Virus record (IMG/VR): IMGVR_UViG_3300041402_000314
Coordinates: 140,150 to 204,149 of that record
Length of the DNA: 64,000 nt
Strand: one strand, 5' to 3'
This document shows, piece after piece, positions 1-51,328 of this stretch. The notes beneath the pieces are model-generated. The model was not told the origin of the DNA. It did not search any database and saw only the letters and a list, made by a program, of their open reading frames with translations. The translations under genes and the position numbers were made by a program. Position 1 is the stretch's first letter. Each line of letters begins with the position of its first letter.

Positions 1-264
1 TGGATAATAGTTTATATATTTTCCGTTTGATGCCATAAAGGATAAATATTTCGGGTAGTGAAATCTATGAGTTACATCTTCAAAGTCCACTCCTTCAAAC
101 TGGACCTTGGTGTACTGTTTAGTTTCGTGTTTAAAGTCACTTCCTTCGAAAAACACCGAATATTTATTTTTCTTTGGAAGATATTCAACCGTAATATTAC
201 GGATGTCGCCCACCTCTATCTTTACATTTGTTGTTATATTTTCACCATCAAAAATAATCTTCAT
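1..264 (-). CDS. hypothetical protein, partial (runs off window start)
   Basis: ATG at 264 directly after the stop of the upstream ORF; frame MKIIFDGENITT... stays open to base 1. Confidence 0.6.
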   Translation of the reverse strand, partial: MKIIFDGENITTNVKIEVGDIRNITVEYLPKKNKYSVFFEGSDFKHETKQYTKVQFEGVDFEDVTHRFHYPKYLSFMASNGKYINYYP

Positions 265-265
265 T

Positions 266-586
266 TTACTGCTCCTCGTCTTCTTCGTCTATCGGATTAA
301 GAACATATTCTCTAGCCAATTCGATTTGGTTAGTGATGAGATCAGATATTTTCTTATGGGTCTCTATAGTATCATGCTCTTCTTCGACTGTCAAGTAAAT
401 ATATGAGCCGAAATGACCATTATAATCAACACTATGGATACCATCTATCTTTTCGAGAGACATATAAAGACATTTACTTGACTCATCATAAGGAATATCG
501 CCCTCGTATTTATCGATGGATAGGAACTCATCAACATCCTCTATAGCAATAGCATAGCTTTTAGAAACCATTTCAAATTTAAGCAT
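266..586 (-). CDS. hypothetical protein
   Basis: ORF 266..607; likely start at ATG 586 (MLKFE), overlapping the end of the upstream ORF. Confidence 0.65.
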   Translation of the reverse strand: MLKFEMVSKSYAIAIEDVDEFLSIDKYEGDIPYDESSKCLYMSLEKIDGIHSVDYNGHFGSYIYLTVEEEHDTIETHKKISDLITNQIELAREYVLNPIDEEDEEQ

Positions 587-785
587 CGTATTTCTCCAAG
601 AGTTCATTTTTTATTTCCATGAGCGCATCCTGCTCTCGGATGAATTCTCTGGTTTTATGGATAAGATTTGAGGTATTGTGTAATTTCGTCTTTTCGGTTT
701 CATCTTCAGTCTTACTAGCCTTATTCGAAATCATCCAATAGAATTTTTCCAGTTCCTCTAATATCTTTTCGCCTTCGAGATTCAT
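579..785 (-). CDS. hypothetical protein
   Basis: 68 aa ORF with GGAGG RBS, downstream of the promoter at 827-855. Confidence 0.7.
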   Translation of the reverse strand: MNLEGEKILEELEKFYWMISNKASKTEDETEKTKLHNTSNLIHKTREFIREQDALMEIKNELLEKYDA

Positions 786-826
786 GTCTTGCCTCCAATT
801 AAGATTATGTCTGACTTACTAAATAC

Positions 827-855
827 ATCATATCAGAACTAATCCTTCTTGTCAA
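827..855 (-). promoter_or_regulatory. sigma70-type early promoter
   Basis: TTGACA-17nt-TATGAT on minus strand. Confidence 0.8.
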
Positions 856-1498
856 GATAAATCTCAATGTTTTCGAAACCATATTTTTCTAATTCCTTGG
901 CATAGTCTTCAGCCTCATCCCTAGTCAACCCATATTTGTCTGGTCTTAGAGATATAGGATGATCACCAGTAACATACCATTTTTCTTTTCGGTCTTTGGC
1001 TTCGTGTATTACAAGATGGAAGTTCTGGGCATTAGTCTTAGCTCTTCGCTCACCATTACAGTATTTAGGGTCACAGTTACGCACAAACCAATCGGTTATC
1101 ATATCATAATCAACCATACGACTGATTGGATGCCAGAATAATACCTTGAGGTCATCTACAGTATTCCATAGAACAGAAATGTTTACAGGCATATCATTTA
1201 CTTCACCGACCTTTACCATCAGACCAGAATTATCCTGTACCCACTCATTTTTACGTTCCTGACAATCTTTCCATAGATAGAGACTTTCACAGCTATTGGC
1301 CTCAACCACAAAATCAGTTGTTTTGAATCGAGTATCTGAATGTTTAGTTAGGTCATATTCATTCACGTCTGACGGCTTTAAGGGAACTGCAATATGTCTG
1401 GGGTCTGTGTTGATATGAAACCATAGATTCCCATTATATCGAATTTTCTCTCCACAAGCAACACAAATAGCTTCTTCACCTTTTTTAGGGTCTTTCAT
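839..1498 (-). CDS. hypothetical protein with N-terminal CxxC
   Basis: 219 aa ORF in a tightly packed minus-strand operon. Confidence 0.75.
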   Translation of the reverse strand: MKDPKKGEEAICVACGEKIRYNGNLWFHINTDPRHIAVPLKPSDVNEYDLTKHSDTRFKTTDFVVEANSCESLYLWKDCQERKNEWVQDNSGLMVKVGEVNDMPVNISVLWNTVDDLKVLFWHPISRMVDYDMITDWFVRNCDPKYCNGERRAKTNAQNFHLVIHEAKDRKEKWYVTGDHPISLRPDKYGLTRDEAEDYAKELEKYGFENIEIYLDKKD

Positions 1499-11093: not shown

Positions 11094-12719
11094 ATGGCTA
11101 AAAAAGATTATTATTTGGACGAAGAGGGAAACCCTGTTTTACCGTCCAATACAACATTACTTCCCAAAATCGCGCGATACGATGGCAAGCCTAAAATCAA
11201 ACGTGCTGGCATTAAAATGGAGCTTACTAGAGATCAGCTAGAAGAGATGGCTAAATGCTCTGCTGACGTAGAATACTTCATGTCAAGATATTGTTATATC
11301 GTTCACCCAGACAAGGGTAAACATAATATAGAGCTATATCCTTTTCAGTATGACTTTGTTAATCACCTAAGAGATAATAGATTTTCTATTGTATTGGCTC
11401 CCAGACAATGCGGTAAATCTACAATTACTGCAATGTATGTACTCCACTATATTCTTTTCAATGATGATAAGAAAGCTATTATCATGGCTAACAAGCTAAA
11501 GATAGCCAAAGAGATATTCCAGAAAGTTAGGATTGCCTATGAGTATCTACCGATTTTCCTTCAGGCTGGTGTCGTAGAATGGGCAAAGACTAGCTGTACC
11601 CTAGAGAATGGTTCTGGATGTTCTGCTGAAGCGACTAGCGCAGACGGTATGAGGGGTATATCTGGAAACCTTATTATCCTTGATGAGTTTGCTTTCCTCA
11701 AGAAGAATATAGCTGATGAATTCTTTACATCCATGTATCCGACTATATCAGCATCCAAAGAGGCGAAACTTATAATCATCTCTACTCCGAATGGTATGAA
11801 CCACTATCATTCGATATGGAATAAAGCGGTTAAAAAGAAGAATACATTTGCGCCATTCAAGGTTAAATGGAATGATGTACCTGATCGTGATGAAGATTTC
11901 AAAGAAGAAACAATTAAGAATATTGGTAAGCTTAAATGGAATCAGGAATATGAGTGTTCCTTTATAGGTAGTTCTAAAACATTAATTAAACCAGAAATTC
12001 TTGAGCAGTTAGAATCCGCAGACCCTATAGAGATTATAGATAACTGTTTTAAGATATACGAACAACCTATTGCTGGAAATACCTATGTTGTAGGTGCAGA
12101 CTCCGCTAAAGGTACTGGTGGTGATTATTCTGTTTCTCAAGTCATAGATATTACAGCCTTTCCATTTAGACAAGTTGCCGTCTATAGGAATAATGAGATA
12201 AGCACAAATAAGTATGGTGATAAAGTATATGAAATAGCTATGAAGTATAATGAAGCTTTTGTCATGTGCGAGAATAACGATGTCGGTCAAGCAGTAGTGA
12301 ATAAATTATGGCATGACTTAGAATACGAGAATCTAGTCAACTATGCTGCTACTAAAGCTGGTAGAAAAGATATAGGTATTAGAGCTACCAAGAAAACTAA
12401 ATCTATGGGATGTGATCTACTTCAGGAATTCTTTGAGGATTTCTTAATAGAGATATTTGACTTAGATACCATATATGAAATATCTAAATTCGAGGAAACA
12501 TCTACTGGTATATTCAAGGCAGAAGATGGAGAACATGACGATACTGTTATGGCTCTTCTCTGGGCATTGTTTATTATAAAGACTAATTATATTGACCGAG
12601 AAGATGATATCAGGGCTTCTAGGGATAGTGATGAAGACCAATATGATGATGAACCACTAGCACCCATCATAATCGATGGGGCTGGTGAAGAAGACGGTAA
12701 TTTTTTATTCCATAACTAA
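11094..12719 (+). CDS. terL: terminase large subunit (T4 gp17-like)
   Basis: Walker A APRQCGKST, Walker B LIILDEFAF, ISTPNG, nuclease GADSAKG...HDDTVMAL. Confidence 0.97.
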   Translation: MAKKDYYLDEEGNPVLPSNTTLLPKIARYDGKPKIKRAGIKMELTRDQLEEMAKCSADVEYFMSRYCYIVHPDKGKHNIELYPFQYDFVNHLRDNRFSIVLAPRQCGKSTITAMYVLHYILFNDDKKAIIMANKLKIAKEIFQKVRIAYEYLPIFLQAGVVEWAKTSCTLENGSGCSAEATSADGMRGISGNLIILDEFAFLKKNIADEFFTSMYPTISASKEAKLIIISTPNGMNHYHSIWNKAVKKKNTFAPFKVKWNDVPDRDEDFKEETIKNIGKLKWNQEYECSFIGSSKTLIKPEILEQLESADPIEIIDNCFKIYEQPIAGNTYVVGADSAKGTGGDYSVSQVIDITAFPFRQVAVYRNNEISTNKYGDKVYEIAMKYNEAFVMCENNDVGQAVVNKLWHDLEYENLVNYAATKAGRKDIGIRATKKTKSMGCDLLQEFFEDFLIEIFDLDTIYEISKFEETSTGIFKAEDGEHDDTVMALLWALFIIKTNYIDREDDIRASRDSDEDQYDDEPLAPIIIDGAGEEDGNFLFHN

Positions 12720-19514: not shown

Positions 19515-21155
19515 ATGCCACAATTACTTTCACCCGATGTAAACATAGTCGAAAGAGATTTAAGTGCTTTTGTTGCGTCTGTAGCTACCAGTATAGCAGT
19601 ATATGTAGGTAGGGCTACTAAAGGACCAGTATGGGAAAAGACACAGGTTTCCAATGAAAGACAGTTTGCAGAACTATTCGGTGAGCCGACATCAACTGAT
19701 TATGAGGATTTTTTTACCGCTGCTGGATTCCTTCAGTATGGTAACACCTTGTATTACACAAGAGTCGTTGATACCGCAACTGCTAAAAACTCACAATTAA
19801 ACGTAAGCACTGGTGCTGCTCCTTCTGCTGGAGATGGTGATTATGTTGCTGATTGGGAAGAATATACGCCCTCATTCGGTGCTGAGAAAATGCAAGTGTA
19901 CGCTAAGTATCCGGGAGCTTACGGTGACACTGATTTCAAAGTAGCAATGATCAGTAATACAGATTGGGCTACTATAGGTACATCACCTACTCTCTCTGGT
20001 TATGAGTCTGTCATCGATCAAGGTCCAGAGCTTGCTACAGAATTCCTTGTTATCGTATCTGCTCTACAGTCAGATGGAGAATATGAAATCCTCGAAACTT
20101 ACCTTGTTTCTGATACCGAAGGAACTAAGGACTTCGAAGGCAATAACATGTATGTCGATGAGGTCATTAATAAAGGCTCAAACTACATACTAGTATTCAA
20201 TAATACTGGCGTGTCCGCTGAACTACAGTCGTTTGCTGAGACTGCTCCTGCTAATGGTGCGGACGGTGATATAAATGAAGCCGATATCGTACTAGGATAT
20301 GATCTTTATGATAACCCTGAAGAAATCGAAATCAACTATGTGATAGGTGGTAGTCATACTACTGTTGCAACTGCAAATGCTATTCTTGCGCTATGTGTTG
20401 CAAGAGCAGACTGTTTTGCGATTCTCGATGTTCCTAAATCTGATGTTGTAGGTATTGCTAGTATTTCAACCGCTGTAAGTAATGTAGTAGACTATAGAAA
20501 GACGGAACTTAATGCTAATACTTCTTACGGTGCGCTATATGCTAACTGGCTTTATATCTATGATAAATATAACGATACAAACAGATGGGTTCCGAGTGGT
20601 GGTCATGTAGCTGGTATCTATGCCCATACTGCTAATGTAGAGGATGCATGGTTCGCTCCTGCTGGACTTAATAGAGGTATTTTGAGTAACGTTATTAAGC
20701 TGGCTATGAATCCGGGTAAATCTTATAGAGATACGCTATATAAGAATCAAATCAATCCATTGGTTAGTTTCCCCGGTCAAGGAATTAGTGTTTGGGGTCA
20801 AAAGACTCTCCAGACTAAACCTTCTGCATTCGATAGAGTTAATGTTAGATTACTCTTTCTATACATGGAAAAAGCTATTGGTAGAAGTGCAAAATATGTT
20901 GTTTTCGAACAAAATGATCAGCTTACTAGAAGTATCTTTAAGAACCAGATTGAACCATTCCTTGATGATATCAAAGGCAGAAGAGGTATATATGACTTCT
21001 TAGTATTGGTAGATGAATCCGTTAATACGCCCGAAAGAGTGGACAGAAATGAGTTTCATTGTGAAATTTTCGTAAAACCAGTTAAGAGTGCAGAATTTAT
21101 CGTACTTCGTTTCACTGCGACAAAAACTGGTGTAGACTTTAGTGAGTTAACTTAA
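19515..21155 (+). CDS. gp18: tail sheath protein (T4 gp18-like)
   Basis: LSPxVxxxExD N-terminus, WFAPAGLNRG, WGQKT...AFDRVNVRLLF, FEQND, IFVKP. Confidence 0.96.
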   Translation: MPQLLSPDVNIVERDLSAFVASVATSIAVYVGRATKGPVWEKTQVSNERQFAELFGEPTSTDYEDFFTAAGFLQYGNTLYYTRVVDTATAKNSQLNVSTGAAPSAGDGDYVADWEEYTPSFGAEKMQVYAKYPGAYGDTDFKVAMISNTDWATIGTSPTLSGYESVIDQGPELATEFLVIVSALQSDGEYEILETYLVSDTEGTKDFEGNNMYVDEVINKGSNYILVFNNTGVSAELQSFAETAPANGADGDINEADIVLGYDLYDNPEEIEINYVIGGSHTTVATANAILALCVARADCFAILDVPKSDVVGIASISTAVSNVVDYRKTELNANTSYGALYANWLYIYDKYNDTNRWVPSGGHVAGIYAHTANVEDAWFAPAGLNRGILSNVIKLAMNPGKSYRDTLYKNQINPLVSFPGQGISVWGQKTLQTKPSAFDRVNVRLLFLYMEKAIGRSAKYVVFEQNDQLTRSIFKNQIEPFLDDIKGRRGIYDFLVLVDESVNTPERVDRNEFHCEIFVKPVKSAEFIVLRFTATKTGVDFSELT

Positions 21156-21170: not shown

Positions 21171-21228
21171 GGAAGGACAGTGGGTAGCTCCCATTGATGA
21201 TGTGTTTACTCCATATCATCTTACTTCC
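21171..21228 (+). promoter_or_regulatory. structured 5' leader (three-way junction)
   Basis: GGAAG/CTTCC closing CAGTGGG-TAGCT-CCCATTG and ATGATGTG/CATATCAT hairpins. Confidence 0.55.
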
Positions 21229-21258
21229 ATACATAACTTAAATAATGGAGTAAACATT

Positions 21259-22239
21259 ATGAAAGAAAAAATAATTTGTCATATTTGCTATAAAGAATTT
21301 AATTCTATTCTTAGTTTATCGAGACACATCAAACCCGCTCACAGTATATCAAGTAAAGATTATTTTGATAAATTTATCAAAAAAGAGAAAAGTGGTTTAT
21401 GCTCAGTATGTTCAAATCCTACTCGTTTTGTTAATTTCGGTATAGGATACAAAAAATATTGTTCAAATAGCTGTCATAACAGAGATAAGAAAGCTCTGAC
21501 AGATATAAGAGATGCACTTATCTATGAAGAAAAAATAAAAACCGAAACGATAGTTTTTGACTGTGAGATTTGCGGATATAAAATTTTTAATAACTATCAT
21601 GGTATTGGTTCTCATCTAAAACATAAACATAACTTATCTATACAAGAATATTATGATAAATATTATTTAGAAAATATATTAGATAAGAAATGTAACATTT
21701 GTGACCGAGAAACATCATTTCGCTCTTTAGAAGTTGGGTATACTAAATATTGCTCTATTTCTTGTAGTAACAAGGAAGAGGTTAACATATTAGCAAGAAA
21801 GAAAGGTATAAATAAGAAAGAAGTAAAGGAGAGACAGTCTCGTAATTTATCACAGAGAATTTTAAATGGGACTTTTAATCCATTCGCTAAAAAATTTAAA
21901 ACTGGATATTTTTATTCTGAGAAAAATCAGAAAGATTTGTATTACCGTTCATCATATGAATTAAAAGCATATCAAATGTTGGAACAGATGTCTTTAGTTA
22001 ACATATATGAAACTGAACCATTTAGAATACCTTATAAGGATATGAAAGGTGTAACTAGAAATTATATACCTGATATTTTGATTATCTATGAAGATGGTAT
22101 GAGAGAATTGGTAGAAGTGAAACCAGAAAATTTATTAAAGGATGAAACCATTCAAATAAAAACAGAATCTGCCAAACAGTATTGTAAAGCCAATAACATG
22201 TCCTTTAATATATGGACTGAAAAATTCCTAGAACTATAA
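21259..22239 (+). CDS. TnsA-like PD-(D/E)xK endonuclease with two tandem Zn-binding repeats (free-standing endonuclease or gp4-like)
   Basis: RSSYE, EPxxIPY, YIPD, LVEVKP, WTE; duplicated CxxC..H...H / CxxC...GYxKYCSxSC; ATG 21259 has a GGAG RBS. Confidence 0.8.
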   Translation: MKEKIICHICYKEFNSILSLSRHIKPAHSISSKDYFDKFIKKEKSGLCSVCSNPTRFVNFGIGYKKYCSNSCHNRDKKALTDIRDALIYEEKIKTETIVFDCEICGYKIFNNYHGIGSHLKHKHNLSIQEYYDKYYLENILDKKCNICDRETSFRSLEVGYTKYCSISCSNKEEVNILARKKGINKKEVKERQSRNLSQRILNGTFNPFAKKFKTGYFYSEKNQKDLYYRSSYELKAYQMLEQMSLVNIYETEPFRIPYKDMKGVTRNYIPDILIIYEDGMRELVEVKPENLLKDETIQIKTESAKQYCKANNMSFNIWTEKFLEL

Positions 22240-42274: not shown

Positions 42275-42279
42275 CTACC

Positions 42280-42322
42280 GACTCCTTTGTGATATAAATA
42301 ATTAAAATATCACAAAGGAGTC
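42280..42322 (+). promoter_or_regulatory. RBS-sequestering hairpin containing a late promoter
   Basis: perfect 16-bp inverted repeat GACTCCTTTGTGATAT/ATATCACAAAGGAGTC; TATAAATA 42293-42300; AAGGAG in the 3' arm. Confidence 0.85.
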
Positions 42323-42324
42323 TT

Positions 42325-43080
42325 ATGTCTGATCAAAGAGTTTCCATTATTATCCCGAATAAAAATAGTTATGAAATGTTAAAGGATTGCATTGATTCTA
42401 TTTTCCTTACCACCTCTTATCCCAACTACGAGATAGTCATTGTAGAAAATGGGTCAACAGAGGAAGATATATTTGAGTATTATGAAATCTTGAAAAAGAA
42501 TCATAGTAATCTCAGAGTATTCACCTATAAAGAACCTTTCAATTTTTCCGCTATAAACAATTTTGCTGTCCGACAAACAAACAGTGAATTCCTGTTATTT
42601 CTCAATAATGATACCAAAATAATCAATGAAGATTGGCTAATCGCTATGGTTCGCATTCTTAAGAATAAAAAGAATGGCGTAGCTGGTGCTACTCTCCTTT
42701 ACGATGATGATACTGTCCAACATGCAGGAATAGCAACAGACCCTAAATGGATAGCATACCACATCAACCATAAAATTACAAGAGAAAACATTCCGACTAA
42801 ATCAATGACGGTTGATGCTGTTACTGGCGCATGTTTATTAACTACAACCGATATATTCAATAAGGTGGGTGGCTTCGATGAGAACCTTCCTATTGCATAT
42901 AATGATGTCGATTTCTGTCTAAAGGTAAGAGATAGAGGCTACAAGATTAAATGGACTCCGAATTCTCTACTATATCATTACGAATCTAAGACAAGAGGAT
43001 TGGATGACGGAACAGAGAAGAGAGCTAGACTTAAACGTGAATCTGAATACATGAGGTCAAAATGGAAGACAAAACTTTAG
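42325..43080 (+). CDS. GT2 glycosyltransferase
   Basis: VSIIIP, VENGS, FNFSAINN, FLNND, AVTGACL, GGFDE, DVDFC, HYESKTRG. Confidence 0.92.
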   Translation: MSDQRVSIIIPNKNSYEMLKDCIDSIFLTTSYPNYEIVIVENGSTEEDIFEYYEILKKNHSNLRVFTYKEPFNFSAINNFAVRQTNSEFLLFLNNDTKIINEDWLIAMVRILKNKKNGVAGATLLYDDDTVQHAGIATDPKWIAYHINHKITRENIPTKSMTVDAVTGACLLTTTDIFNKVGGFDENLPIAYNDVDFCLKVRDRGYKIKWTPNSLLYHYESKTRGLDDGTEKRARLKRESEYMRSKWKTKL

Positions 43081-43847
43081 TCAATTTAGTAATAGTCACA
43101 TTTAATCGTTGGGAATATACCGAACAGTGTATACCGAGTATAAGAGAAACCGCTTCTGATAATATTCCATACATAATAACCGTTGTCGATAATGGCTCGA
43201 CTGATGGGACTCCAGACAAATTAAAGGAAATGTATAATGCTGGTCTCATAGATCATCTTATATTACTCAAAGAGAATATCGGTATCTCTAAGGCTCAAAA
43301 TCTAGGGTGGAAATGTCATGAAGAAGTTCCTTTCTATGCTAAGATAGATAATGATATTATATTCAATAAAAATGGCTGGTTAAATGGCATTATAAATACT
43401 TTTGAGAAGACCACCAATATCGGTGCTTTAGGTTATCAATGCTCTGATGACGGTGCTGAATACCCTGCTGTTATAGATAACGGAGTCGAGTATAGAGTTA
43501 AGAATGGCAATATTGGCGGAGCCTGTTTCTTCGTACCGAAACATATCAATGAGGAACTAGGATATTGGTGTGAGGAATATGGCAAGTATGGTGAAGAGGA
43601 TGCCGACTATGGGATGCGTATTACCGTCTCAGGCCACTTAAATTGTTATATGATGGATAGGTCTACCATTACCCATTTACCAGACGAGAAAGGCGATTAT
43701 AGGTCTTTCAAGGATAATGAGAGAGAAGAGAACTTGAAGGGAAATTTCTGGAATCTGATCAAGGAATATAGAGCTGGAAAAAGACCTTTGAAAATAGAGA
43801 CAAATATTTTAGATGAAGCTGATATCGAAGGAGAATATATAAGATGA
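43062..43847 (+). CDS. GT2 glycosyltransferase
   Basis: IVTFNR, VVDNGSTDGT, N.G...A.N, IDND, G.EDAD. Confidence 0.9.
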   Translation: MEDKTLVNLVIVTFNRWEYTEQCIPSIRETASDNIPYIITVVDNGSTDGTPDKLKEMYNAGLIDHLILLKENIGISKAQNLGWKCHEEVPFYAKIDNDIIFNKNGWLNGIINTFEKTTNIGALGYQCSDDGAEYPAVIDNGVEYRVKNGNIGGACFFVPKHINEELGYWCEEYGKYGEEDADYGMRITVSGHLNCYMMDRSTITHLPDEKGDYRSFKDNEREENLKGNFWNLIKEYRAGKRPLKIETNILDEADIEGEYIR

Positions 43848-44281
43848 AAATACCTGAATTGATAGACGAATATTTTGAAATTCTTGATAGATTGATTGAA
43901 ATTAATAAATTAAGAAGAGAGGAAATCCATGTTAACATAAAAAATATGATAGGTTCCCAATATTACATTGATGAATACTGTACAATTAAATGTGATATTG
44001 GGAGACAAACTGGAAAGTCTGAATATGTTAGGAGAAGAGGTAATAAAAATACATTAGTAATTGTAACTAAGTCCGCATATAAGGCACATTATAAAGATTT
44101 TGAGGGAACGGTAATGTCACCAATAGAGATTATGAACGGTAAGATACGTGGAATTGAAAGATTCGAAACCATATTTATAGAGGAACCTTCTTTTACTCTT
44201 AAGAATGTTTCTAAAGATCAATTATATAATGAGTTGGTGGATAATACGAAAGAACAAACCTTTATTATATTAGGAATGTAA
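43844..44281 (+). CDS. small protein with terminase-ATPase-like Walker motifs
   Basis: GRQTGKS and RG...TIFIEE in only 145 aa. Confidence 0.65.
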   Translation: MKIPELIDEYFEILDRLIEINKLRREEIHVNIKNMIGSQYYIDEYCTIKCDIGRQTGKSEYVRRRGNKNTLVIVTKSAYKAHYKDFEGTVMSPIEIMNGKIRGIERFETIFIEEPSFTLKNVSKDQLYNELVDNTKEQTFIILGM

Positions 44282-44282
44282 G

Positions 44283-44660
44283 ATGAAGAAAGAATATGCT
44301 CATGAAATTGATATGACTCACCTAGTACCACCATATAAGGCAAAAGAAAGCGATCTTATTTTTAATAATAGACCTACTCAGGAAGATGTTATTAAAGCTG
44401 AAAGGGATGATAAACTTATTATTATATTATTAGAAGTTCCTGAATTGACTTGTGATGAGCTGATTGCGTTTACAAAGGGATATCTAAATTGTTTAGGAAT
44501 TGAAGAATCTAGCCTTAACATACAAACATATGTGGTATCTGAAATAATAGATTATGATGGTTGGAAAGAGAGTTTTCTTAAAAATTATTTACTGATTAAC
44601 GAAATGCATGAGCCTTGGTTTGCTCCTGCTGGATTTAATAGAGGTATGATAAAAAAATGA
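44283..44660 (+). CDS. small protein ending in a tail-sheath signature motif
   Basis: PWFAPAGFNRG at the C-terminus. Confidence 0.65.
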   Translation: MKKEYAHEIDMTHLVPPYKAKESDLIFNNRPTQEDVIKAERDDKLIIILLEVPELTCDELIAFTKGYLNCLGIEESSLNIQTYVVSEIIDYDGWKESFLKNYLLINEMHEPWFAPAGFNRGMIKK

Positions 44661-44696
44661 AAATTGGACTTGTAGATTAAGGCGACAAACTAACGA

Positions 44697-44704
44697 TATA
44701 AATA
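44697..44704 (+). promoter_or_regulatory. T4-type late promoter
   Basis: TATAAATA upstream of the methyltransferase/GT operon. Confidence 0.75.
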
Positions 44705-44736
44705 CTTAAAATAATAGCTTATAGGAGAAAGAAAAA

Positions 44737-45294
44737 ATGGAATACGAATTAGGTGAACCAGCTAAAATTATATTGAAGGAACTGACTGATAGAGGACATT
44801 TAGATAAAGATAATTTACCTAAAATATGGATAGAAACAGGTACGTATAAAGGTCATAGTACAAAAAGTTTCGCAGAAGTATTTGACCATGTTTATACTAT
44901 TGAAATCAAACCAGAATTAACCGAAGAGGCTAAAGAATATTGTAAAGACTTTGATAACATTACATATTTGAATGGTCCTTCTCCCACAGTATTGAATGAG
45001 CTATTACCTACCTTAAAAGAAACTTATGCTATATTCTTAGATGCTCATCATAGTGGTGGTGATACTGGTCTTGATGAGAAATACGGAGCGCATGGAACGC
45101 CTCTTGAAGAGGAACTAGCCATTATAGGGAAATACAGTAAAGACGGTCTTATCGTAATCGATGATTGTGTAGACCTTGGCTCTTATAATTACCCAACTCC
45201 TCAAAAATTAGAAACTGTTATGAAGGGTATTAATGGTAACTATAAGGTGGAGTTCATGGAAATACTTAGACGTATAGGCGTATGCTACACGTAA
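44737..45294 (+). CDS. class I SAM-dependent methyltransferase
   Basis: IETGTYKG, VYTIE, FLDAH.SGG.T, PL.EEL, VIDD. Confidence 0.85.
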   Translation: MEYELGEPAKIILKELTDRGHLDKDNLPKIWIETGTYKGHSTKSFAEVFDHVYTIEIKPELTEEAKEYCKDFDNITYLNGPSPTVLNELLPTLKETYAIFLDAHHSGGDTGLDEKYGAHGTPLEEELAIIGKYSKDGLIVIDDCVDLGSYNYPTPQKLETVMKGINGNYKVEFMEILRRIGVCYT

Positions 45295-45312
45295 GATAAA
45301 ATCTTAGGAGAA

Positions 45313-46047
45313 TTGAAAATGAAATTAGCTTTATTGTGTCCGACAAGAGAAAGAGTAGGGAGTGTTAGAAGATTAGTCGATTCTATTTTAGCGACAACTA
45401 CCGATACCAACAACATAATTCTTTATCTAGGAATAGATGATGACGACCCTACTAAAGGGGAAGTGGAAGAAATGGTTTCAGAATATTCTTTTGTTAAAGT
45501 AATCACTGTTCCTAGTGACGGCACAGGAGAATTCATAGGGTTGGGAAAAATATGGAATCATATGGTAACAGAAGTACCCGATGAAATATTTGCTATGATA
45601 GGCGATGATATGGTTTTCGAAACCAAAAATTGGGATGTCGAGATACTAGGGGAATTTGAAAGAAGTGCAGATAAGATAATTCTCGTCCATTGTAATGACG
45701 GTATGAGAGGTATCAATGAGCCTTTGGCTGTCAATTCGTTTATATCCAGAATATATTATGAAACATTTGGACAATATGTGAGAGAAGAATGGAAACATGA
45801 GTATCATGATACATGGTTACATGATGTTTTCACTAGGTTAGGAAGAAGAATCTATAGACATGATATAGTTTTATTCCATCACCATCCATGCAATCCAAAT
45901 TCAGAGGCAGTTGGTGATAAAACCACCGAAAGATTGGATTCTTCAAGAACTCATAATAATGATGCGAACCCACATAAATCGTTCGAAGACTTAATTCCAT
46001 TAAGAGTAGCAGAAGTGGCTAAATTACAGGAGATTATCAATGGTTAA
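45313..46047 (+). CDS. GT-A fold glycosyltransferase
   Basis: PTR.R, IDDDD, GDD..F....WD, D.W. Confidence 0.8.
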   Translation: MKMKLALLCPTRERVGSVRRLVDSILATTTDTNNIILYLGIDDDDPTKGEVEEMVSEYSFVKVITVPSDGTGEFIGLGKIWNHMVTEVPDEIFAMIGDDMVFETKNWDVEILGEFERSADKIILVHCNDGMRGINEPLAVNSFISRIYYETFGQYVREEWKHEYHDTWLHDVFTRLGRRIYRHDIVLFHHHPCNPNSEAVGDKTTERLDSSRTHNNDANPHKSFEDLIPLRVAEVAKLQEIING

Positions 46048-46606
46048 ATTATCCTTATTAATATGTACATTGGAAAATCGAAAAGACTTTCTAGCTAAAT
46101 TAATGGCTTGTATTGATAAGCAAAAGACAGATGAAGTGGAGGTGCTATTTTCTCTTGATAATGGGGATAAGACAACAGGGCAGAAAAGAAACGAATTGTT
46201 AGAGCAAGCTCAAGGCGAATATACGGCTTTCTTGGACGATGATGATATGATATCAGATGACTATGTTTCGTTAGTCTTGGATGCTATCAATAAAAGCAAT
46301 CCTGATGTAATAGGTATGCATCTCTTAATGACCGTAGATGGTGAGAACGAAGAACGTACATATCATGCCCTGAAGTATGATCATTGGTGGGATGAACCAG
46401 ACCCAGAAAGACCGGGTAGAACCAGATATTTTAGAAATCCAAATCATCTCAATCCAGTAAAAAAAGAATTAGCTTTAAAAACAAAATTCATAGATACTGA
46501 TTGGGGCGAAGACCTTGAATATAGTAAAGGATTGCTCCAGTATCTCAAAACCGAAGAATATATCGAATCTCCGATATACTACTATCTCTGTAGGAGCAAT
46601 AAATGA
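46040..46606 (+). CDS. GT2 glycosyltransferase
   Basis: LSLLICT, G.KRN.L...A.GEY..F.DDDD, GED. Confidence 0.88.
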   Translation: MVKLSLLICTLENRKDFLAKLMACIDKQKTDEVEVLFSLDNGDKTTGQKRNELLEQAQGEYTAFLDDDDMISDDYVSLVLDAINKSNPDVIGMHLLMTVDGENEERTYHALKYDHWWDEPDPERPGRTRYFRNPNHLNPVKKELALKTKFIDTDWGEDLEYSKGLLQYLKTEEYIESPIYYYLCRSNK

Positions 46607-47283
46607 ACATAAGAATTGACCAGTCCGCAGGTTTTGGCGATATCTTTTTCTGTCAAAAAATAGGAAGGAGATTGATCGAGCTTGGACATACGGTATATTG
46701 GCCTATTTTTCATGGATATAGTTATGTATCCCAATATATACCTGAATTCCGTTGGTGTGAACCACCAGCGAACGAAGGTTTTGAAAATTTAAACCTCGGA
46801 CAGGCAAGCATTTTAATCGGATGGGATGACCCTAGTGATATCGATGATAAGGTCATGGAATCCAAATACGATTACGCTAATACTCTTTATGATATTGGCG
46901 ACTATTCGGATTGGCCTGATTATCTCAAAATAAACAGATATCACGACAAAGAGAAATTATTATCTGATAAGGTTCTTAAAAATGTTCCCGATGAATTTTG
47001 TGTCATAAATAGACATTTCGCAACTGAATGTTTATTTCTTGAAGAAGAGATAAAATCAGATTTGCCTATAGTAGAGATAAACAAACTACCCGGATTTACC
47101 TTATTTGATTGGTGTGGAGTCTTGGAGAAGGCGACTGAGATTAGGATTCCCGATTCCAGCTTTCCATATCTCGTAGAAATGTTAGATACTACCGATGACC
47201 TTTACATGTATAATCGTACAGGGGAACCCTATATAAGAACTAAAAAGATTTGGAAGAAAAAATGGAGGTTTATGGATTCATGA
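46603..47283 (+). CDS. putative GT-B-type glycosyltransferase
   Basis: Q..GFGDI.F, LFDW..VLE.A.EI...DSS. Confidence 0.6.
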   Translation: MNIRIDQSAGFGDIFFCQKIGRRLIELGHTVYWPIFHGYSYVSQYIPEFRWCEPPANEGFENLNLGQASILIGWDDPSDIDDKVMESKYDYANTLYDIGDYSDWPDYLKINRYHDKEKLLSDKVLKNVPDEFCVINRHFATECLFLEEEIKSDLPIVEINKLPGFTLFDWCGVLEKATEIRIPDSSFPYLVEMLDTTDDLYMYNRTGEPYIRTKKIWKKKWRFMDS

Positions 47284-48224
47284 AATTTTTAATAACAGGC
47301 GTAGACGGATTTGTAGGTAAACATTTAGCTGATGTCCTTCTCGGAAAGGGTTGTGAAGTATATGGTCTCACCAGAAGAACGAAACACGATGAATCGAACA
47401 TAACGTATTTATTCGAAGATATAAACGATAAGGTGGGAATATATAAGCTATTCAAAGAACATTCTTTTGATGGTGTATTCCATCTAGCAGGATTAACCCA
47501 TCCACCGACATCATTTAAAGAACCAGTACAATATTTTGAGACCAATGCTTTAGGGTCTATAAATATATGTGATGCTATACAGAAGACAAATAAAGAATGT
47601 GTGTTGATGCAATGTTCTACTCCAGAAGTTTATGGTATATGTCCTAGTGATAAAGAGATAGATGAATCCTTTCCACTTAGACCTATGAACCCTTATGGAG
47701 TTTCTAAAGCAGGAGCAGATTTATATATTTTAGAAAGAGCTAGAAATAACGAGATAAAGGCATTCCTTACCAGAAGTGGTTCGCATACTGGTCCGGGTAG
47801 ACCTGCTAATTATTCAATATCTTCAGATGCTATTCAGATAGCTAAAATATTGAAAGGCGAGCAAGAGCCTAAAATAAGAGTGGGCAACTTATCATCTCAA
47901 AGAGCCGTATTGGACGTAAGAGATATAGCGGATGCTTATTACGAATTAATGGTAAGCTTTTTAGCTGGTGATATACCCAATGGAGAGATTTTCCATGTCA
48001 GCGGTAAGAATCTTCAAGAGATAGGATATTACCTAAATATCATGTTAGATGCTTATGGTCTGGAAGTTGAAAAGGTAAAAGATAGCAGACTATATAGAAA
48101 AATAGATATACCTATACAAATCTTAAATAGCGACAAGTTAACAAAATATATCGACTGGACTCCTAACATACCTATAGAGGATACCTTAAGAGATTTAGTT
48201 GAATACTGGATGGAGAGAATATAA
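47280..48224 (+). CDS. GDP-mannose 4,6-dehydratase / GDP-4-keto-6-deoxymannose reductase family SDR
   Basis: LITG.DGFVG, HLAG, ST.EVYG, PYGVSK, H.GP.R, VGNL...R...DVRD; start ATG 47280. Confidence 0.88.
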   Translation: MKFLITGVDGFVGKHLADVLLGKGCEVYGLTRRTKHDESNITYLFEDINDKVGIYKLFKEHSFDGVFHLAGLTHPPTSFKEPVQYFETNALGSINICDAIQKTNKECVLMQCSTPEVYGICPSDKEIDESFPLRPMNPYGVSKAGADLYILERARNNEIKAFLTRSGSHTGPGRPANYSISSDAIQIAKILKGEQEPKIRVGNLSSQRAVLDVRDIADAYYELMVSFLAGDIPNGEIFHVSGKNLQEIGYYLNIMLDAYGLEVEKVKDSRLYRKIDIPIQILNSDKLTKYIDWTPNIPIEDTLRDLVEYWMERI

Positions 48225-49273
48225 TGAGTGTTAAAGATGTAGATTCACATAAATTAGGTTATCATCCAGAAAGAGTTGTCGAATGGAAACAAAACGGTAT
48301 TTGTTTTCCTCTTCATATCGAAGTAGGTTTAACCAATAAATGTAATCATGCTTGTATACAATGTACATTGGATTGGATTAATCATAAAAGTGATATCATA
48401 GAGACTGAAGTATTTCTGAAGACGCTTGAAGATGCTGCTAAGATGGGTGTCAAGTCAATTTATTTTGCTGGAGAAGGTGAGCCAACATTACATAAGGACT
48501 TACCTTTATTCGTTAAAAAGGCTTATGATCTTGGTATGAAAATTTCATTGGCTACCAATGGCTCTAAATTGGATAGGGAAATGTCTGAGAAGATCATGCC
48601 TTATTTATCTTGGATAAGATTCAGCGTAGATGCTGCAACTAAAGAGACCTTCAGTAAGATACATAGAGTAGGCATCAACGAATTCGATAAGGTAGTTGAT
48701 AATATAAAGACTTGTATCGAAGTTAATGGTTCTGGGTGTCAAGTAGGTATCCAGACTTTACTTATGCCTGAGAATGTCCACGAAATAGAAGATTTGGCTA
48801 AGATGTCTAAAGAGTGGGGAGCGCATAATATTCAGGTTAAACCAGCTCATACACATCCAAAAAGCTCATATCAAGCTGGTATTTATCTTTATTCTCAAGA
48901 AGAATTACAGACACGTTTAGAAACGTTAAGTGATGAGAATTTCACTGCCATCGTAAGACTGAAGAGCATGGAGAGATTATTAGAGCCTAGAACGTATCGA
49001 GAATGCCACGCATTCCACTTTTATTGCCTAATTGATGCATATGGTCAAGTTACACCTTGTAATATCTTCTACAGCGACCCTGAGTTCATATTCGGTAATA
49101 TACATGAAGAATCTCTAACCGATATTTGGATGGGCGATAAGAAGAAAGAAGTTATAGAGAAAATAACCGAGACCAACCATTCAAGATGTGATGAATATAG
49201 ATGTAGACAAGACGTTATGAATAGGTATCTCGAAAGAGTAAAGAATCCAGAACTTAATGACGAGTTTATTTAA
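48224..49273 (+). CDS. radical SAM protein with SPASM/twitch domain
   Basis: CNHACIQC, GEGEPTLH, TNG, C-terminal C...G.V.PC...GNI....L..IW. Confidence 0.92.
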   Translation: MSVKDVDSHKLGYHPERVVEWKQNGICFPLHIEVGLTNKCNHACIQCTLDWINHKSDIIETEVFLKTLEDAAKMGVKSIYFAGEGEPTLHKDLPLFVKKAYDLGMKISLATNGSKLDREMSEKIMPYLSWIRFSVDAATKETFSKIHRVGINEFDKVVDNIKTCIEVNGSGCQVGIQTLLMPENVHEIEDLAKMSKEWGAHNIQVKPAHTHPKSSYQAGIYLYSQEELQTRLETLSDENFTAIVRLKSMERLLEPRTYRECHAFHFYCLIDAYGQVTPCNIFYSDPEFIFGNIHEESLTDIWMGDKKKEVIEKITETNHSRCDEYRCRQDVMNRYLERVKNPELNDEFI

Positions 49274-49892
49274 TATGAAATTACCTGATATCATAGAAGA
49301 ATATAGAGCTGAAGAGGGCAACAAACATTTCTATAAAATAGACGATGTTTGGGTTTGGCCTATGCAGAACAACCAGATATTTCCGCTTTTCGAAAAGTTA
49401 TTTAAGGATAATAAATTTGAAAGGATTGTAGAGATAGGTACTGCATATGGTGGACTTCCGATTCTATTAAGAGCTATGGGATTCGAAGGCGATATAATCA
49501 CTTATAATATTCATGATGAATTGAAAAATGATGTAGCAACATTGTTTAATAAATTCGTCATATATCGAATAATACAAGATGTGTTTGCTAATGAGAAAGA
49601 ATTAGGTGAAAGGATTTCAGCCAAAGGCGGAACCTTGATTATCTGTGATGGTGGCGATAAACCTAGAGAGGTTAATATATTTTCAAAATATTTGAAAACA
49701 GGTGATGTCATCATAACCCATGATTATTTCGATAGCGAAGAGAAATTTGAATCAGGTGAGTTAAGTGAATATTGGGGTGTATGTGAAATCACCTATAAAG
49801 ATATTGAGCAAGCTTGTGTTGATAACGGAATAGAACAAATAGAATCAACTTTATCAGAACGTGCAGCGATGTATGTAGGGAGGAAGAAATGA
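49257..49892 (+). CDS. SAM-dependent methyltransferase (CmcI-like)
   Basis: IVEIGTA.GG, CDGG.K..E, LK.GD.I..HD. Confidence 0.78.
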   Translation: MTSLFNMKLPDIIEEYRAEEGNKHFYKIDDVWVWPMQNNQIFPLFEKLFKDNKFERIVEIGTAYGGLPILLRAMGFEGDIITYNIHDELKNDVATLFNKFVIYRIIQDVFANEKELGERISAKGGTLIICDGGDKPREVNIFSKYLKTGDVIITHDYFDSEEKFESGELSEYWGVCEITYKDIEQACVDNGIEQIESTLSERAAMYVGRKK

Positions 49893-50317
49893 AAATAAAA
49901 GAAGCATTAAAGTTAGGAAATGGTAAAGCACAACTGTCTGAGTATGCAGAAGGAATATATGCAGAATTGGGTGTCAATGAGACTTTATTTTGTGGTGTCG
50001 TACCAATACCATTTAAAGATATTATCGGTGAAGATTGGCTACCCTTCTATGACGGAATTGTAGTGATTCCTAAAAATGGCGGAGAGGTCTGGAAACGCGA
50101 CTCTGGGGAAAAGCTTTTCATTTTAGAAGGAAAGGCGCAGAAAGAACCTTTCATAGCTAGTGAAGCCGTAGATTCATCTGGAAGAATTCATTGTTTAACT
50201 TCTATAAATACCTATGACGATGATGTTAGAATACTTGGTCGTGGAGGTATTCTTTTAGTTCACGGCTATGACGGTTGGACTAGAGAATACCCCATAATAG
50301 ATGAGAAGGAGCAATAA
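49889..50317 (+). CDS. paralog family A member inside the glycosylation island
   Basis: MKIKEALKLGNGKA...DIIGEDWLPF...PKNGGEVWK...VHG.DGWTREYP. Confidence 0.7.
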   Translation: MKIKEALKLGNGKAQLSEYAEGIYAELGVNETLFCGVVPIPFKDIIGEDWLPFYDGIVVIPKNGGEVWKRDSGEKLFILEGKAQKEPFIASEAVDSSGRIHCLTSINTYDDDVRILGRGGILLVHGYDGWTREYPIIDEKEQ

Positions 50318-51328
50318 ATGAAAAGAGCATTAGTATGTGGTGCTGGTGGATTCATCGGTAGCCATCTAGTAAAAAGACTTAAGAATGAAGGATATTGGGT
50401 TAGGGGTGTTGACCTCAAACAACCAGAATTCTCGGAGACTGAAGCAGATGATTTTTATGTCGGTGATCTTAGAAATCCTAATGTCTGTAGCACTGTTCTA
50501 CATTATAATACAACTCATGAGAAGGACTTCGATGAGGTCTATCAATTAGCTGCTGATATGGGCGGAGCTGGTTTCGTATTCTCTGGAGAAAATGATGCTG
50601 ATATCATGCATAACTCAGCACTGATCAATCTCAATATACTTAATCTGCACCATAAGTTTAAAAAGATTTTCTATAGTAGCTCGGCTTGTATGTATCCAGA
50701 ACATAATCAGCTCGACCCAGACAATCCTAATTGTACTGAGGATTCGGCATATCCAGCTAATCCAGATAGTGAATATGGATGGGAAAAACTATTCAGCGAA
50801 AGACTCTTCCTCGCATATGCTAGAAATAAAGGTGTAGATGTTAGAATAGCGAGATTCCATAATATCTTCGGTGAAGAGGGTACATGGGATGGTGGACGTG
50901 AGAAAGCTCCTGCTGCTCTATGTAGAAAGATCATAAAAACATATGGCGGAATCGAGATGTGGGGAGATGGTAAACAGACACGCTCATTCCTATATATCGA
51001 TGAGTGTGTTGAAGGAATAAGACGTTTAATGGAATCTGATTTCAAAGAACCTGTTAATATTGGTTCTGAGGAAATGGTATCTATTAAGGATTTTGCTATA
51101 CTGATAGCAACTATCGAGGATAAAGATATTGTGATTACTCATATAGACGGACCGATTGGTGTTGCTGGAAGGAATTCTGATAATACACTGATTCAGGAGA
51201 AGCTAGGTTGGAAGCCATCATTCCCATTGTTGTATGGAATTACGAAAACCTATTTCTGGATAAAAGAACAGGTACGTTTATCGGACATGGCGAAGGTAGA
51301 GATAGCTAGTGTGGATGAGAACGTATAA
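50318..51328 (+). CDS. GDP-mannose 3,5-epimerase-like NAD-dependent epimerase
   Basis: GAGGFIG, LAADMGG.GF, SSSACMYP, YGWEK, RFHNI.G, GGREKAPAA.CRK, WGDG.QTRSF. Confidence 0.9.
   Translation: MKRALVCGAGGFIGSHLVKRLKNEGYWVRGVDLKQPEFSETEADDFYVGDLRNPNVCSTVLHYNTTHEKDFDEVYQLAADMGGAGFVFSGENDADIMHNSALINLNILNLHHKFKKIFYSSSACMYPEHNQLDPDNPNCTEDSAYPANPDSEYGWEKLFSERLFLAYARNKGVDVRIARFHNIFGEEGTWDGGREKAPAALCRKIIKTYGGIEMWGDGKQTRSFLYIDECVEGIRRLMESDFKEPVNIGSEEMVSIKDFAILIATIEDKDIVITHIDGPIGVAGRNSDNTLIQEKLGWKPSFPLLYGITKTYFWIKEQVRLSDMAKVEIASVDENV

What the first reader, a model, noticed from the sequence alone, without database searches (positions are those of the whole stretch)
44283..44660. Small protein carrying the tail-sheath signature, adjacent to the terminase mimic
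Seen: C-terminal PWFAPAGFNRG versus AWFAPAGLNRG in gp18; DNA 44616-44647 matches 20649-20680 at 30/32 nt. Upstream RDDKLIIILLEVP loosely echoes sheath RADCFAILDVP. Inference: a condensed sheath-derived module. Its tandem position with the terminase-like ORF, inserted among glycosyltransferases, suggests a two-gene cassette of structural-protein mimics.
Basis: partly seen in the sequence, partly recalled or inferred. Interest (0 to 1): 0.7.

Follow-up and report, generated by a model that had tools for sequence, protein, structure and literature searches.

The report
Small phage protein with sheath-copy tails
A real, conserved but unannotated 125-residue protein of an uncultured T4-like phage has an unrelated folded core and a flexible end that copies the most conserved motif of the phage's own tail sheath, so it probably acts by imitating sheath, though its partner and role are untested.

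Summary
ORF 44283..44660 (+) ends in PWFAPAGFNRG. Its DNA at 44616-44647 matches the sheath gene at 20649-20680 in 30 of 32 bases. In the whole 204-kb genome, all six frames, this motif occurs only in these two genes.

The ORF is a real gene. It has five close homologues under purifying selection (dN/dS 0.08-0.63). A profile search finds about 20 more distant small proteins, and 17 of the 25 aligned members keep the C-terminal motif.

It is not a condensed sheath. AlphaFold gives a confident generic alpha/beta core (residues 21-110) with two flexible tails. With the motif removed, the core shows no similarity to the sheath region upstream of the motif, and no sheath structure is matched.

A second, weaker sheath echo lies in the N-terminal tail (EIDLSHxVPP versus the sheath's N-terminal arm). 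The T4 gp18 equivalents of both segments were disordered in the crystal of a gp18 fragment that lacks the C-terminal domain.

The neighbouring ORF145 is a generic small P-loop protein, not a terminase mimic, and is not an obligate partner. Both genes are accessory indels in a late-transcribed glycosyltransferase cluster.

Best guess, unproven: a sheath-subunit mimic that docks on sheath assembly surfaces. An immune-sensor decoy remains possible.

The parts
44283..44660 (+). ORF125: the 125-aa small protein, a member of an undescribed family of T4-like-phage proteins
   Evidence: ORF. Homologues at 57-86% identity. dN/dS 0.08-0.63. Profile search finds 20 representatives. No Pfam, PHROG or NCBIfam family for it.
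44304..44333 (+). N-terminal tail motif E8-I-D-M-T-H-L-V-P-P17 (family consensus E-I-D-L-S-H-x-V-P-P), which echoes the sheath's N-terminal arm
   Evidence: hhalign without the C-terminal motif pairs family 6-18 with sheath 11-23: score 22.9, P 0.014. None of 200 column permutations reach it. Controls score 8.9-14.4. pLDDT is about 55.
44343..44612 (+). Folded alpha/beta core (residues 21-110; strand-helix x3), with the conserved D-x-I-F-x-x-x-P-T-x-x-D-x-x-x-A-E block
   Evidence: AlphaFold2 with the 25-sequence alignment: blocks of ten residues average pLDDT 90-96 over 21-100 and 83 over 101-110. Only generic Rossmann-like matches, best Z 5.5, and no sheath.
44613..44645 (+). C-terminal tail motif P111-W-F-A-P-A-G-F-N-R-G121, a copy of the sheath signature; the ORF stops 4 residues later
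   Evidence: hhalign of family versus sheath profile: probability 91%, E 9e-7, 23 columns only. pLDDT is about 52-55.
19515..21155 (+). Tail sheath gene (gp18-like, 546 aa), source of the copied motifs
   Evidence: PF04984, PF17482 and phrog_23. T4 gp18 structures matched at 3e-89.
20649..20680 (+). Sheath motif W379-F-A-P-A-G-L-N-R-G388, the DNA twin of 44616-44647; it aligns with T4 gp18 W488-G497
   Evidence: W379, A383 and G384 are invariant in 69 sheath sequences, and A381, P382 and R387 nearly invariant. T4 residues 481-496 were disordered in the gp18M crystal (PMC3004832).
19545..19583 (+). Sheath N-terminal arm segment, residues 11-23 (IVERDLSAFVASV; clade consensus V-x-E-x-D-L-S-T-x-I-P-A-V)
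   Evidence: The 24 N-terminal residues of T4 gp18 were disordered in gp18M.
43844..44281 (+). ORF145: neighbouring small P-loop (RecA/ResIII-like) protein, phrog_2586; not an obligate partner
   Evidence: Absent next to the ORF125 homologues in L001 and L006.
42293..42300 (+). T4-type late promoter box TATAAATA ahead of the GT-GT-ORF145-ORF125 gene string
   Evidence: The same box precedes the sheath gene (19467) and the next gene (44697). No terminator-like site follows ORF125.
43817..44720 (+). Indel: the segment carrying ORF145+ORF125 that is missing from the syntenic locus L027
   Evidence: blastn: L027 matches window 42335-43816 and then 44721-45398. Gene order of L027.

Best explanation
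ORF125 belongs to an undescribed family of small accessory proteins of T4-like phages. Each has a compact alpha/beta core carrying two flexible tails. The C-terminal tail is a near-exact copy of the most conserved sheath motif (W-F/Y-A-P-A-G-x-N/K-R-G). The N-terminal tail resembles part of the sheath's N-terminal arm.

My best reading is mimicry of a sheath subunit. The tails occupy the surface that normally receives these two sheath segments, most likely the sheath C-terminal ('handshake') domain or a partner of it. ORF125 has no acceptor domain of its own, so it would cap or shield sheath subunits. It could hold free subunits back from off-pathway polymerisation, or modulate sheath growth, much as tail terminators cap the last ring with a short terminal strand.

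Shown: the gene is real and under selection; the motif is conserved in the family; the core is folded and the tails are flexible; late-promoter boxes lie upstream; the gene is accessory. Inferred: that the tails bind anything, what they bind, and the effect on assembly.
For: The motif is unique to the sheath and ORF125 in the genome.

The motif is kept in 17 of 25 family members, including members only 25-33% identical to ORF125 overall. So it is selected, not a recent copy.

The family prefers F/Y at the position where this sheath clade has L. That argues for independent selection rather than gene conversion.

Both tails are low-confidence in a model whose core is confident.

The N-tail match to the sheath N-terminus scores 22.9, against 8.9-14.4 for the controls and at most 20.2 in 200 permutations.

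The T4 equivalents of the two copied segments are the N-terminal 24 residues and W488-G497. The N-terminal 24 residues and residues 481-496 were the parts left disordered in gp18M, the fragment lacking the C-terminal domain. This suggests both segments need that domain, or assembly, to become ordered.

There is a precedent. Terminator proteins cap the sheath by adding a short terminal strand to the sheet of the sheath C-terminal domain; in some phages 13 residues suffice (PMC12929629; handshake described in PMC10457771).

A TATAAATA box lies at 42293, and the same box precedes the sheath gene.
Against: There is no direct evidence of binding.

The family is sporadic. A relative with an 82% identical sheath lacks the gene precisely. 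No homologue was found from the contig of the 92%-identical relative. An assembly factor of any importance should be more constant.

Distant members sit among small early-type ORFs. That setting is more typical of host-takeover or anti-defence genes.

I could not inspect coordinates, so I do not know what the W-x-A-P-A-G loop touches in an assembled sheath. The loop may be intramolecular.

The N-tail similarity is only P about 0.01. It matches the linker after the first strand of the arm, not clearly the handshake strand itself.
Confidence: 0.33

Rival explanations
1. Immune decoy. The two tails display the most conserved sheath epitopes on a small stable scaffold. They soak up, or block without activating, a host sensor that recognises unassembled tail sheath.
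For: The gene is accessory and patchy, and sits in indel hot spots. Distant members lie among small early-type ORFs. Bacterial STAND/Avs sensors are reported to bind conserved assembly interfaces of many core virion proteins; the same preprint names tail sheath only as a possible further target (bioRxiv 10.64898/2026.01.04.697583). The copied motif is the most invariant part of the sheath.
Against: I found no sheath-sensing defence system in the literature I searched. An epitope copy could as easily trigger a sensor as block it. The host is unknown (marine sediment and cold-seep metagenomes). Nothing here tests binding.
Confidence: 0.2
2. Inherited or structural motif without mimicry. The family descends from an ancient sheath fragment, or the motif simply serves the small protein's own folding, oligomerisation or some unrelated ligand. 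The likeness to sheath then has no functional meaning.
For: Relaxed or global alignments lay the whole ORF collinearly on sheath 264-392, with weak recurring echoes such as L-x-I-E-x-S-x-Y versus L-N-x-N-T-S-Y. Eight of 25 family members lack the motif, so the core can exist without it.
Against: Without the motif there is no significant similarity to the collinear sheath region. No sheath structure is matched. The motif lies in a flexible tail outside the fold, yet it is among the best conserved parts of the family. That points to an external partner.
Confidence: 0.17
3. Accessory of the glycosylation cluster. ORF125 guides or regulates the neighbouring glycosyltransferases towards the sheath or other virion proteins, using the sheath-like tails to join the assembling tail.
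For: In the window and in L001, L002, L003 and L006 (four of the five close-homologue contexts) the gene sits in the same GT2 / epimerase / radical-SAM-SPASM cluster, downstream of fibre-like genes and behind late-promoter boxes.
Against: These contexts are all close relatives, so they amount to one inherited arrangement. The same cluster works without the gene in L027 and L029. The distant members whose surroundings could be read are not near glycosyltransferases.
Confidence: 0.08
4. DNA-level feature. The 32-bp twin is a recombination or gene-conversion tract between the two loci and has no meaning at protein level.
For: Seven of 8 synonymous codons are identical, P about 0.009. A metagenomic scaffold (L001) joins an ORF125 homologue to a sheath gene exactly at the motif.
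Against: The F/L difference is fixed between the family and the sheath clade. All shared codons are the genome's commonest or second-commonest. AGAGG inside the N-R-G codons also looks like the ribosome-binding site of the downstream gene. L001 is a three-part chimera with a GC jump, and its sheath part matches none of the related sheath genes. Both copies lie on the same strand 24 kb apart, so recombination between them would delete essential tail genes.
Confidence: 0.03

Closest known systems
Tail sheath protein (T4 gp18 family; Pfam PF04984 Phage_sheath_1 plus PF17482 Phage_sheath_1C)
   Same: It carries the family's most conserved motif W-x-A-P-A-G-x-N-R-G almost letter for letter, plus a weaker echo of the N-terminal arm. 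It is encoded in the same genome, and the same late-promoter box precedes both genes.
   Different: It is 125 aa rather than 546. No Pfam match. The core is unrelated by sequence and fold. It has no C-terminal handshake domain, since the ORF ends 4 residues after the motif. It is accessory rather than universal.
Tail terminator / sheath-capping proteins (T4 gp15 and orthologues), which cap the last sheath ring by adding a short terminal strand to the sheet of the sheath C-terminal domain (PMC12929629)
   Same: A small globular protein with a short flexible terminal peptide that could dock on a sheath assembly surface. This is the mechanism I propose by analogy.
   Different: No sequence or fold relation: terminators have a tube-like fold, and ORF125 has an alpha/beta core. 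Here the peptides copy sheath sequence itself. Binding is not shown.
Phage anti-defence proteins that mimic or compete with the triggering molecule
   Same: A small accessory protein in variable genome regions that presents a copy of a conserved viral feature.
   Different: No sheath sensor was found in the papers I searched. No such decoy with sequence-level copies of a structural protein's motifs is known to me (my own knowledge, not tested). Untested here.
HAD-like / Rossmann-like small alpha/beta domains (best structural neighbours)
   Same: A three-layer alpha/beta arrangement. The motif after strand 1 (h-h-h-N/T-x-x-P-T) is placed like HAD motif I.
   Different: Best Z is only 5.5. There are three strands only. 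The catalytic Asp-x-Asp is absent (N or T in the family), so no enzyme activity is implied.

Membership tests
Tail sheath protein (PF04984 / PF17482) | Match to the Pfam sheath domain models | tested here: not met
   ORF125 has no Pfam family at E <= 0.1. None of the 25 family members hits PF04984 or PF17482 at E <= 10. The window's true sheath hits both.
Tail sheath protein (PF04984 / PF17482) | Conserved W-x-A-P-A-G-x-N/K-R-G signature | tested here: met
   PWFAPAGFNRG versus AWFAPAGLNRG. hhalign probability 91% over 23 columns.
Tail sheath protein (PF04984 / PF17482) | Homology of the body to sheath domain III beyond the motif | tested here: not met
   The motif-less profile scores 11.2 against sheath 255-377; permuted profiles score 10.6 +/- 2.0. 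No sheath chain is listed among the best 50 Foldseek PDB matches or the best 50 VIA-align entries.
Tail sheath protein (PF04984 / PF17482) | C-terminal handshake domain that accepts neighbours' strands | tested here: not met
   The ORF ends 4 residues after the motif. The apparent sheath continuation in P0004 is an assembly chimera.
Tail terminator / sheath cap (gp15-like) | Tube-protein-like fold | tested here: not met
   The model is strand-helix x3, a Rossmann-like alpha/beta fold. Its structural neighbours are HAD- and USP-like.
Tail terminator / sheath cap (gp15-like) | Terminal peptide that docks on the sheath C-terminal domain | not testable with these tools
   This needs a binding assay or a structure of the complex. 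Only the analogy is available.
Anti-defence decoy | Binds and neutralises a host immune sensor | not testable with these tools
   The host and its defence systems are unknown. No sheath sensor is described in the papers searched.
HAD-like phosphatase | Catalytic D-x-D-x-T after strand 1 | tested here: not met
   The family has h-h-h-[N/T]-x-x-P-T, with no conserved Asp at the nucleophile position. Best Z is 5.5.
Large terminase (for the neighbouring ORF145) | Similarity to the terminase ATPase beyond the Walker A | tested here: not met
   BLASTP against the window's TerL gives a best E of 0.23. No Pfam family at E <= 0.1. Only IGRQTGKSE versus APRQCGKST is shared. The fold is RecA/ResIII-like.

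The most novel reading that the evidence does not exclude
ORF125 and its family are decoys, or 'assembly-interface mimics'. A phage copies two short, invariant assembly peptides of its own tail sheath onto an unrelated scaffold to engage whatever recognises unassembled sheath, such as a still undiscovered host immune sensor of tail sheath. That would be the first sequence-level self-mimic of a virion protein used in phage-host conflict.
Probability: 0.18. Interest if true: 0.85.

Novelty: new variant of a known kind. Interest (0 to 1): 0.55.

Why it matters
Short-motif mimicry is well known in viruses of eukaryotes, but I know of few examples in phages. Here a phage keeps, under selection, a small protein whose disordered ends reproduce the most invariant peptide of its own tail sheath, and probably part of the sheath's N-terminal arm.

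If the tails bind the sheath's assembly platform, the family would be a new class of regulators of contractile-tail assembly. It would also be a ready-made peptide tool to block sheath polymerisation.

If the tails bind a host sensor, the family would point directly to an undiscovered sheath-sensing immune system and its counter-measure.

Either way the family is unannotated: it has no Pfam, PHROG or NCBIfam model. The finding also flags a database artefact, the fused protein P0004, which comes from a scaffold mis-joined at the shared motif.

Tried and rejected
Complex prediction of sheath plus ORF125. Score 0.00, no verdict. This is not evidence for or against binding.

Sequence homology of the ORF body to sheath. 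hhalign without the motif, the permutation tests and the global modes give no support for the region upstream of the motif.

Fold searches with both models (PDB by Foldseek, VIA-align wide, BFVD, AFDB clusters, ESM Atlas). Only generic Rossmann-like neighbours, and no sheath.

Family libraries (Pfam, PHROGs, NCBIfam) for ORF125 and family members. Nothing useful.

Cultured phages. blastn of the locus, and tblastn of ORF125, P0008, P0010 and P0013 against 50,697 phage records, found only sheath genes through the motif, or nothing.

IMG/VR and JGI metagenome scans with the family. No relatives were confirmed. The IMG/VR hits of P0008 are all sheath genes sharing APWFAPAGFKRG.

The 197-aa 'fusion' P0004, an ORF125 N-part joined to a sheath C-part. 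Rejected as a three-piece chimeric scaffold. GC jumps from about 0.33 to 0.47 at the motif, a bacterial PEP-utilising-enzyme fragment follows, and the sheath part matches none of the related sheath genes.

Co-variation of the tail motif with the cognate sheath motif. Not possible, because all other family members lie on short contigs or on a contig without DNA, and whole metagenome records could not be searched.

Expression. No RNA run was listed; the DNA runs are marine-sediment and cold-seep metagenomes.

RiPP or sulfatase-maturase idea, with ORF125 as substrate of the nearby radical-SAM/SPASM enzyme. Dropped, because the same enzyme cluster exists without ORF125 in L027 and lies among sugar-nucleotide enzymes.

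Sigma-70 promoter and terminator scan of 42000-45400. Nothing above background.

Full report
**1. What is there.** The window is the last 64 kb of a 204,149-bp virus record. It has 35% G+C. It carries T4-type tail genes: a gp18-like sheath at 19515..21155, a gp19-like tube, TerL and others. Its nearest cultured relatives have sheath proteins only about 38-39% identical. The DNA comes from marine-sediment or cold-seep metagenomes.

ORF 44283..44660 (+) encodes 125 residues ending in EPWFAPAGFNRGMIKK. In the whole genome, in six frames, W.[AS]PAG and PAG..RG occur only in the sheath and in this ORF. No third 32-mer lies within 7 mismatches.

**2. Is the DNA identity more than the shared peptide?** Ten of 11 residues agree, and 7 of 8 degenerate codons are identical. 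From the window's own codon usage the chance of 7 or more is about 0.009. All shared codons are the commonest or second-commonest. AGAGG inside the N-R-G codons lies 12 nt before the ATG of what was originally the next gene, so it probably doubles as a ribosome-binding site.

The ORF family has F or Y at the position where this sheath clade has L. Related sheath genes drift at synonymous sites in the motif (L012). I therefore see no sign of continuing gene conversion. The two copies are kept alike by selection on the peptide.

**3. It is a real gene with a family.** Five close homologues (57-86% identity) exist in metagenomes. Pairwise dN/dS is 0.08-0.63. A profile search of 1.84 billion representatives finds 20 small proteins of 100-181 aa at E <= 0.001, and no sheath proteins among them.

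In the 25-sequence alignment the conserved blocks are:
- an N-terminal E-I-D-L-S-H-x-V-P-P;
- D-x-I-F-x-x-x-P-T-x-x-D-x-x-x-A-E;
- L-G-I-x-x-S;
- the C-terminal P-W-F/Y-x-P-A-G-F/Y-N/K-R-G.

The last block is recognisable in 17 of 25 members, including members only 25-33% identical to ORF125. The motif is therefore old and selected in this family, not a recent duplication from the sheath gene. No Pfam, PHROG or NCBIfam model covers the family, and tblastn found no cultured phage that carries it.

**4. It is not a condensed sheath.** AlphaFold2 with the 25-sequence alignment gives mean pLDDT 83. The confident core spans residues 21-110 (strand-helix three times). Blocks of ten residues average 90-96 over 21-100 and 83 over 101-110. 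Both ends are at about 52-55.

Foldseek and VIA-align find only generic Rossmann-like neighbours such as HAD- and USP-like proteins, with best Z 5.5. No sheath chain is listed among their best matches.

Profile-profile comparison with a 111-sequence sheath alignment gives 91% probability (E 9e-7), but over 23 columns only, namely the motif. With the motif removed, the score against sheath 255-377 is 11.2, inside the permutation distribution of 10.6 +/- 2.0. The 'RDDKLIIILLEVP / RADCFAILDVP' echo is therefore unsupported.

**5. A second sheath echo.** With the C-terminal motif removed, the best match anywhere in the sheath profile is family 6-18 (EIDLSHxVPP) against sheath 11-23 (V-x-E-x-D-L-S-T-x-I-P-A-V). 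That segment lies at the N-terminus of both proteins. The score is 22.9 (P 0.014). None of 200 column permutations reach it; their maximum is 20.2. Controls score lower: reversed sheath 14.1, a glycosyltransferase profile 11.9, and the other sheath segments 8.9-14.4. This is suggestive, not proven.

**6. Why these two segments are interesting.** By alignment, the C-terminal motif corresponds to T4 gp18 W488-G497. [quoted passage not shown] So the N-terminal arm and most of the motif (W488-R496) fall in the two parts of gp18 that were disordered without the C-terminal domain.

The sheath N- and C-terminal strands form the 'handshake' sheet that is added to the C-terminal domain of a subunit in the next ring (PMC10457771). 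Tail terminators cap the last ring by donating a short terminal strand to that same domain; in some phages 13 residues suffice (PMC12929629). By analogy, ORF125 looks like the docking face of a sheath subunit grafted onto a small unrelated core that has no acceptor domain. That is the basis of my preferred mechanism, capping or shielding of sheath subunits. I could not inspect coordinates, so what the W-x-A-P-A-G loop contacts in the assembled sheath remains unknown to me.

**7. Genomic setting.** The gene is the last of a string GT2-GT2-ORF145-ORF125 (42325..44660) with overlapping or abutting stops and starts. The string is preceded by the T4-type late-promoter box TATAAATA at 42293. The same box precedes the sheath gene (19467) and the following gene (44697). 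TATAAATA is not significantly enriched over the window as a whole (22 matches against 13.7 expected), so late transcription is inferred from where the boxes sit. No terminator-like site follows ORF125. The surrounding 42-51 kb encodes GT2 enzymes, methyltransferases, NAD-dependent epimerases/dehydratases and a radical-SAM/SPASM protein, downstream of what look like fibre genes.

The region is an indel hot spot:
- Window 43817-44720 (ORF145+ORF125) is absent from the syntenic locus L027, in a relative whose sheath is 82% identical.
- ORF145 alone is absent in L001 and L006.
- The methyltransferase-like gene 44737..45294, with its own promoter box, is absent in L002, L003 and L006. The window keeps a 7-codon relic of the next gene's start at 44657-44680.
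- No ORF125 homologue was returned from the 204,679-bp contig of the closest relative, whose sheath is 92% identical.
- The distant family members whose surroundings could be read lie among small ORFs near topoisomerase, GIY-YIG, radical-SAM, Cpn10 and similar genes. They are not near glycosyltransferases or ORF145.

So ORF125 is an accessory, mobile gene and not part of a fixed pair.

**8. The neighbour.** ORF145 (43844..44281) matches phrog_2586, of unknown function. It has homologues in Stenotrophomonas, Xanthomonas and Aeromonas phages. The ESM Atlas places it in large clusters of about 140-176-aa phage proteins whose models resemble the first RecA-like domain of ResIII/DEAD helicases (TM 0.60-0.65). 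It shares a Walker A of the form RQxGKS with TerL but nothing else (best BLASTP E 0.23). 'Terminase mimic' is not supported.

**9. An artefact worth flagging.** Database protein P0004 (197 aa) seems to continue an ORF125 homologue into a sheath C-terminal part. Its scaffold L001 is a three-piece chimera: phage locus, then a foreign, GC-richer sheath fragment joined exactly at the motif, then a bacterial PEP-utilising-enzyme fragment. It is not evidence for a natural fusion.

**10. Verdict.** The finding is a real and unusual feature. It is an unannotated family of small T4-like-phage proteins. Their flexible C-terminal end, and probably also the N-terminal end, reproduce conserved assembly peptides of the tail sheath.

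How it works is inferred only. I favour sheath-subunit mimicry acting on tail assembly (about one in three). An immune-sensor decoy is the most interesting alternative (about one in five). The patchy distribution fits the decoy idea better than the assembly idea. The structural logic of the two copied segments fits the assembly idea better. Binding and polysheath assays would settle it quickly.

Noticed in passing
window 21202..22239 (+): A 345-aa ORF with a TnsA-like endonuclease N domain and a ROS/MucR zinc finger sits between the sheath and tube genes. It is absent in relative L010, where sheath is followed directly by tube. L012 has a different 523-aa ORF in that slot. It looks like a mobile endonuclease slot.
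   Followed up: partly
window 44657..45300; L002, L003, L006: The methyltransferase-like gene 44737..45294, with its own TATAAATA box, is an insertion. In three relatives the ORF125 stop overlaps the ATG of the next glycosyltransferase. The window keeps a 7-codon relic of that start (ATGAAAATTGGACTTGTAGATTAA, 44657-44680).
   Followed up: yes
L001 (ENA scaffold_400494), 1..1321: A three-part chimeric scaffold. It joins a phage GT/ORF125 locus, a foreign GC-richer sheath fragment (joined exactly at the shared sheath motif) and a bacterial PEP-utilising-enzyme fragment. It yields the spurious 197-aa fusion protein P0004 in the protein collection.
   Followed up: yes
window 42325..51328 (+): A large cluster of GT2 glycosyltransferases, methyltransferases, two NAD-dependent epimerases/dehydratases and a radical-SAM/SPASM enzyme lies downstream of what look like fibre genes, with T4-type late-promoter boxes. 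It may serve virion glycosylation or sugar modification. It is syntenic in L027 and L029.
   Followed up: partly
window 43844..44281 (+): ORF145 has a Walker A IGRQTGKSE close to TerL's APRQCGKST (window 11094..12719). Its predicted fold is RecA/ResIII-like. It belongs to a widespread family of small phage proteins of unknown function (phrog_2586).
   Followed up: partly
window 44640..44644: AGAGG inside the N-R-G codons of the sheath-like motif lies 12 nt upstream of the ATG at 44657. It may be the Shine-Dalgarno site of the (ancestrally) overlapping downstream gene, which would add constraint on these codons.
   Followed up: no
IMG/VR loci L014-L026: Many uncultured myophage sheath proteins carry the variant APWFAPAGFKRG, identical to the tail of distant family member P0008. 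This hints that tail variants may track sheath variants, but the cognate genome of P0008 could not be read.
   Followed up: partly
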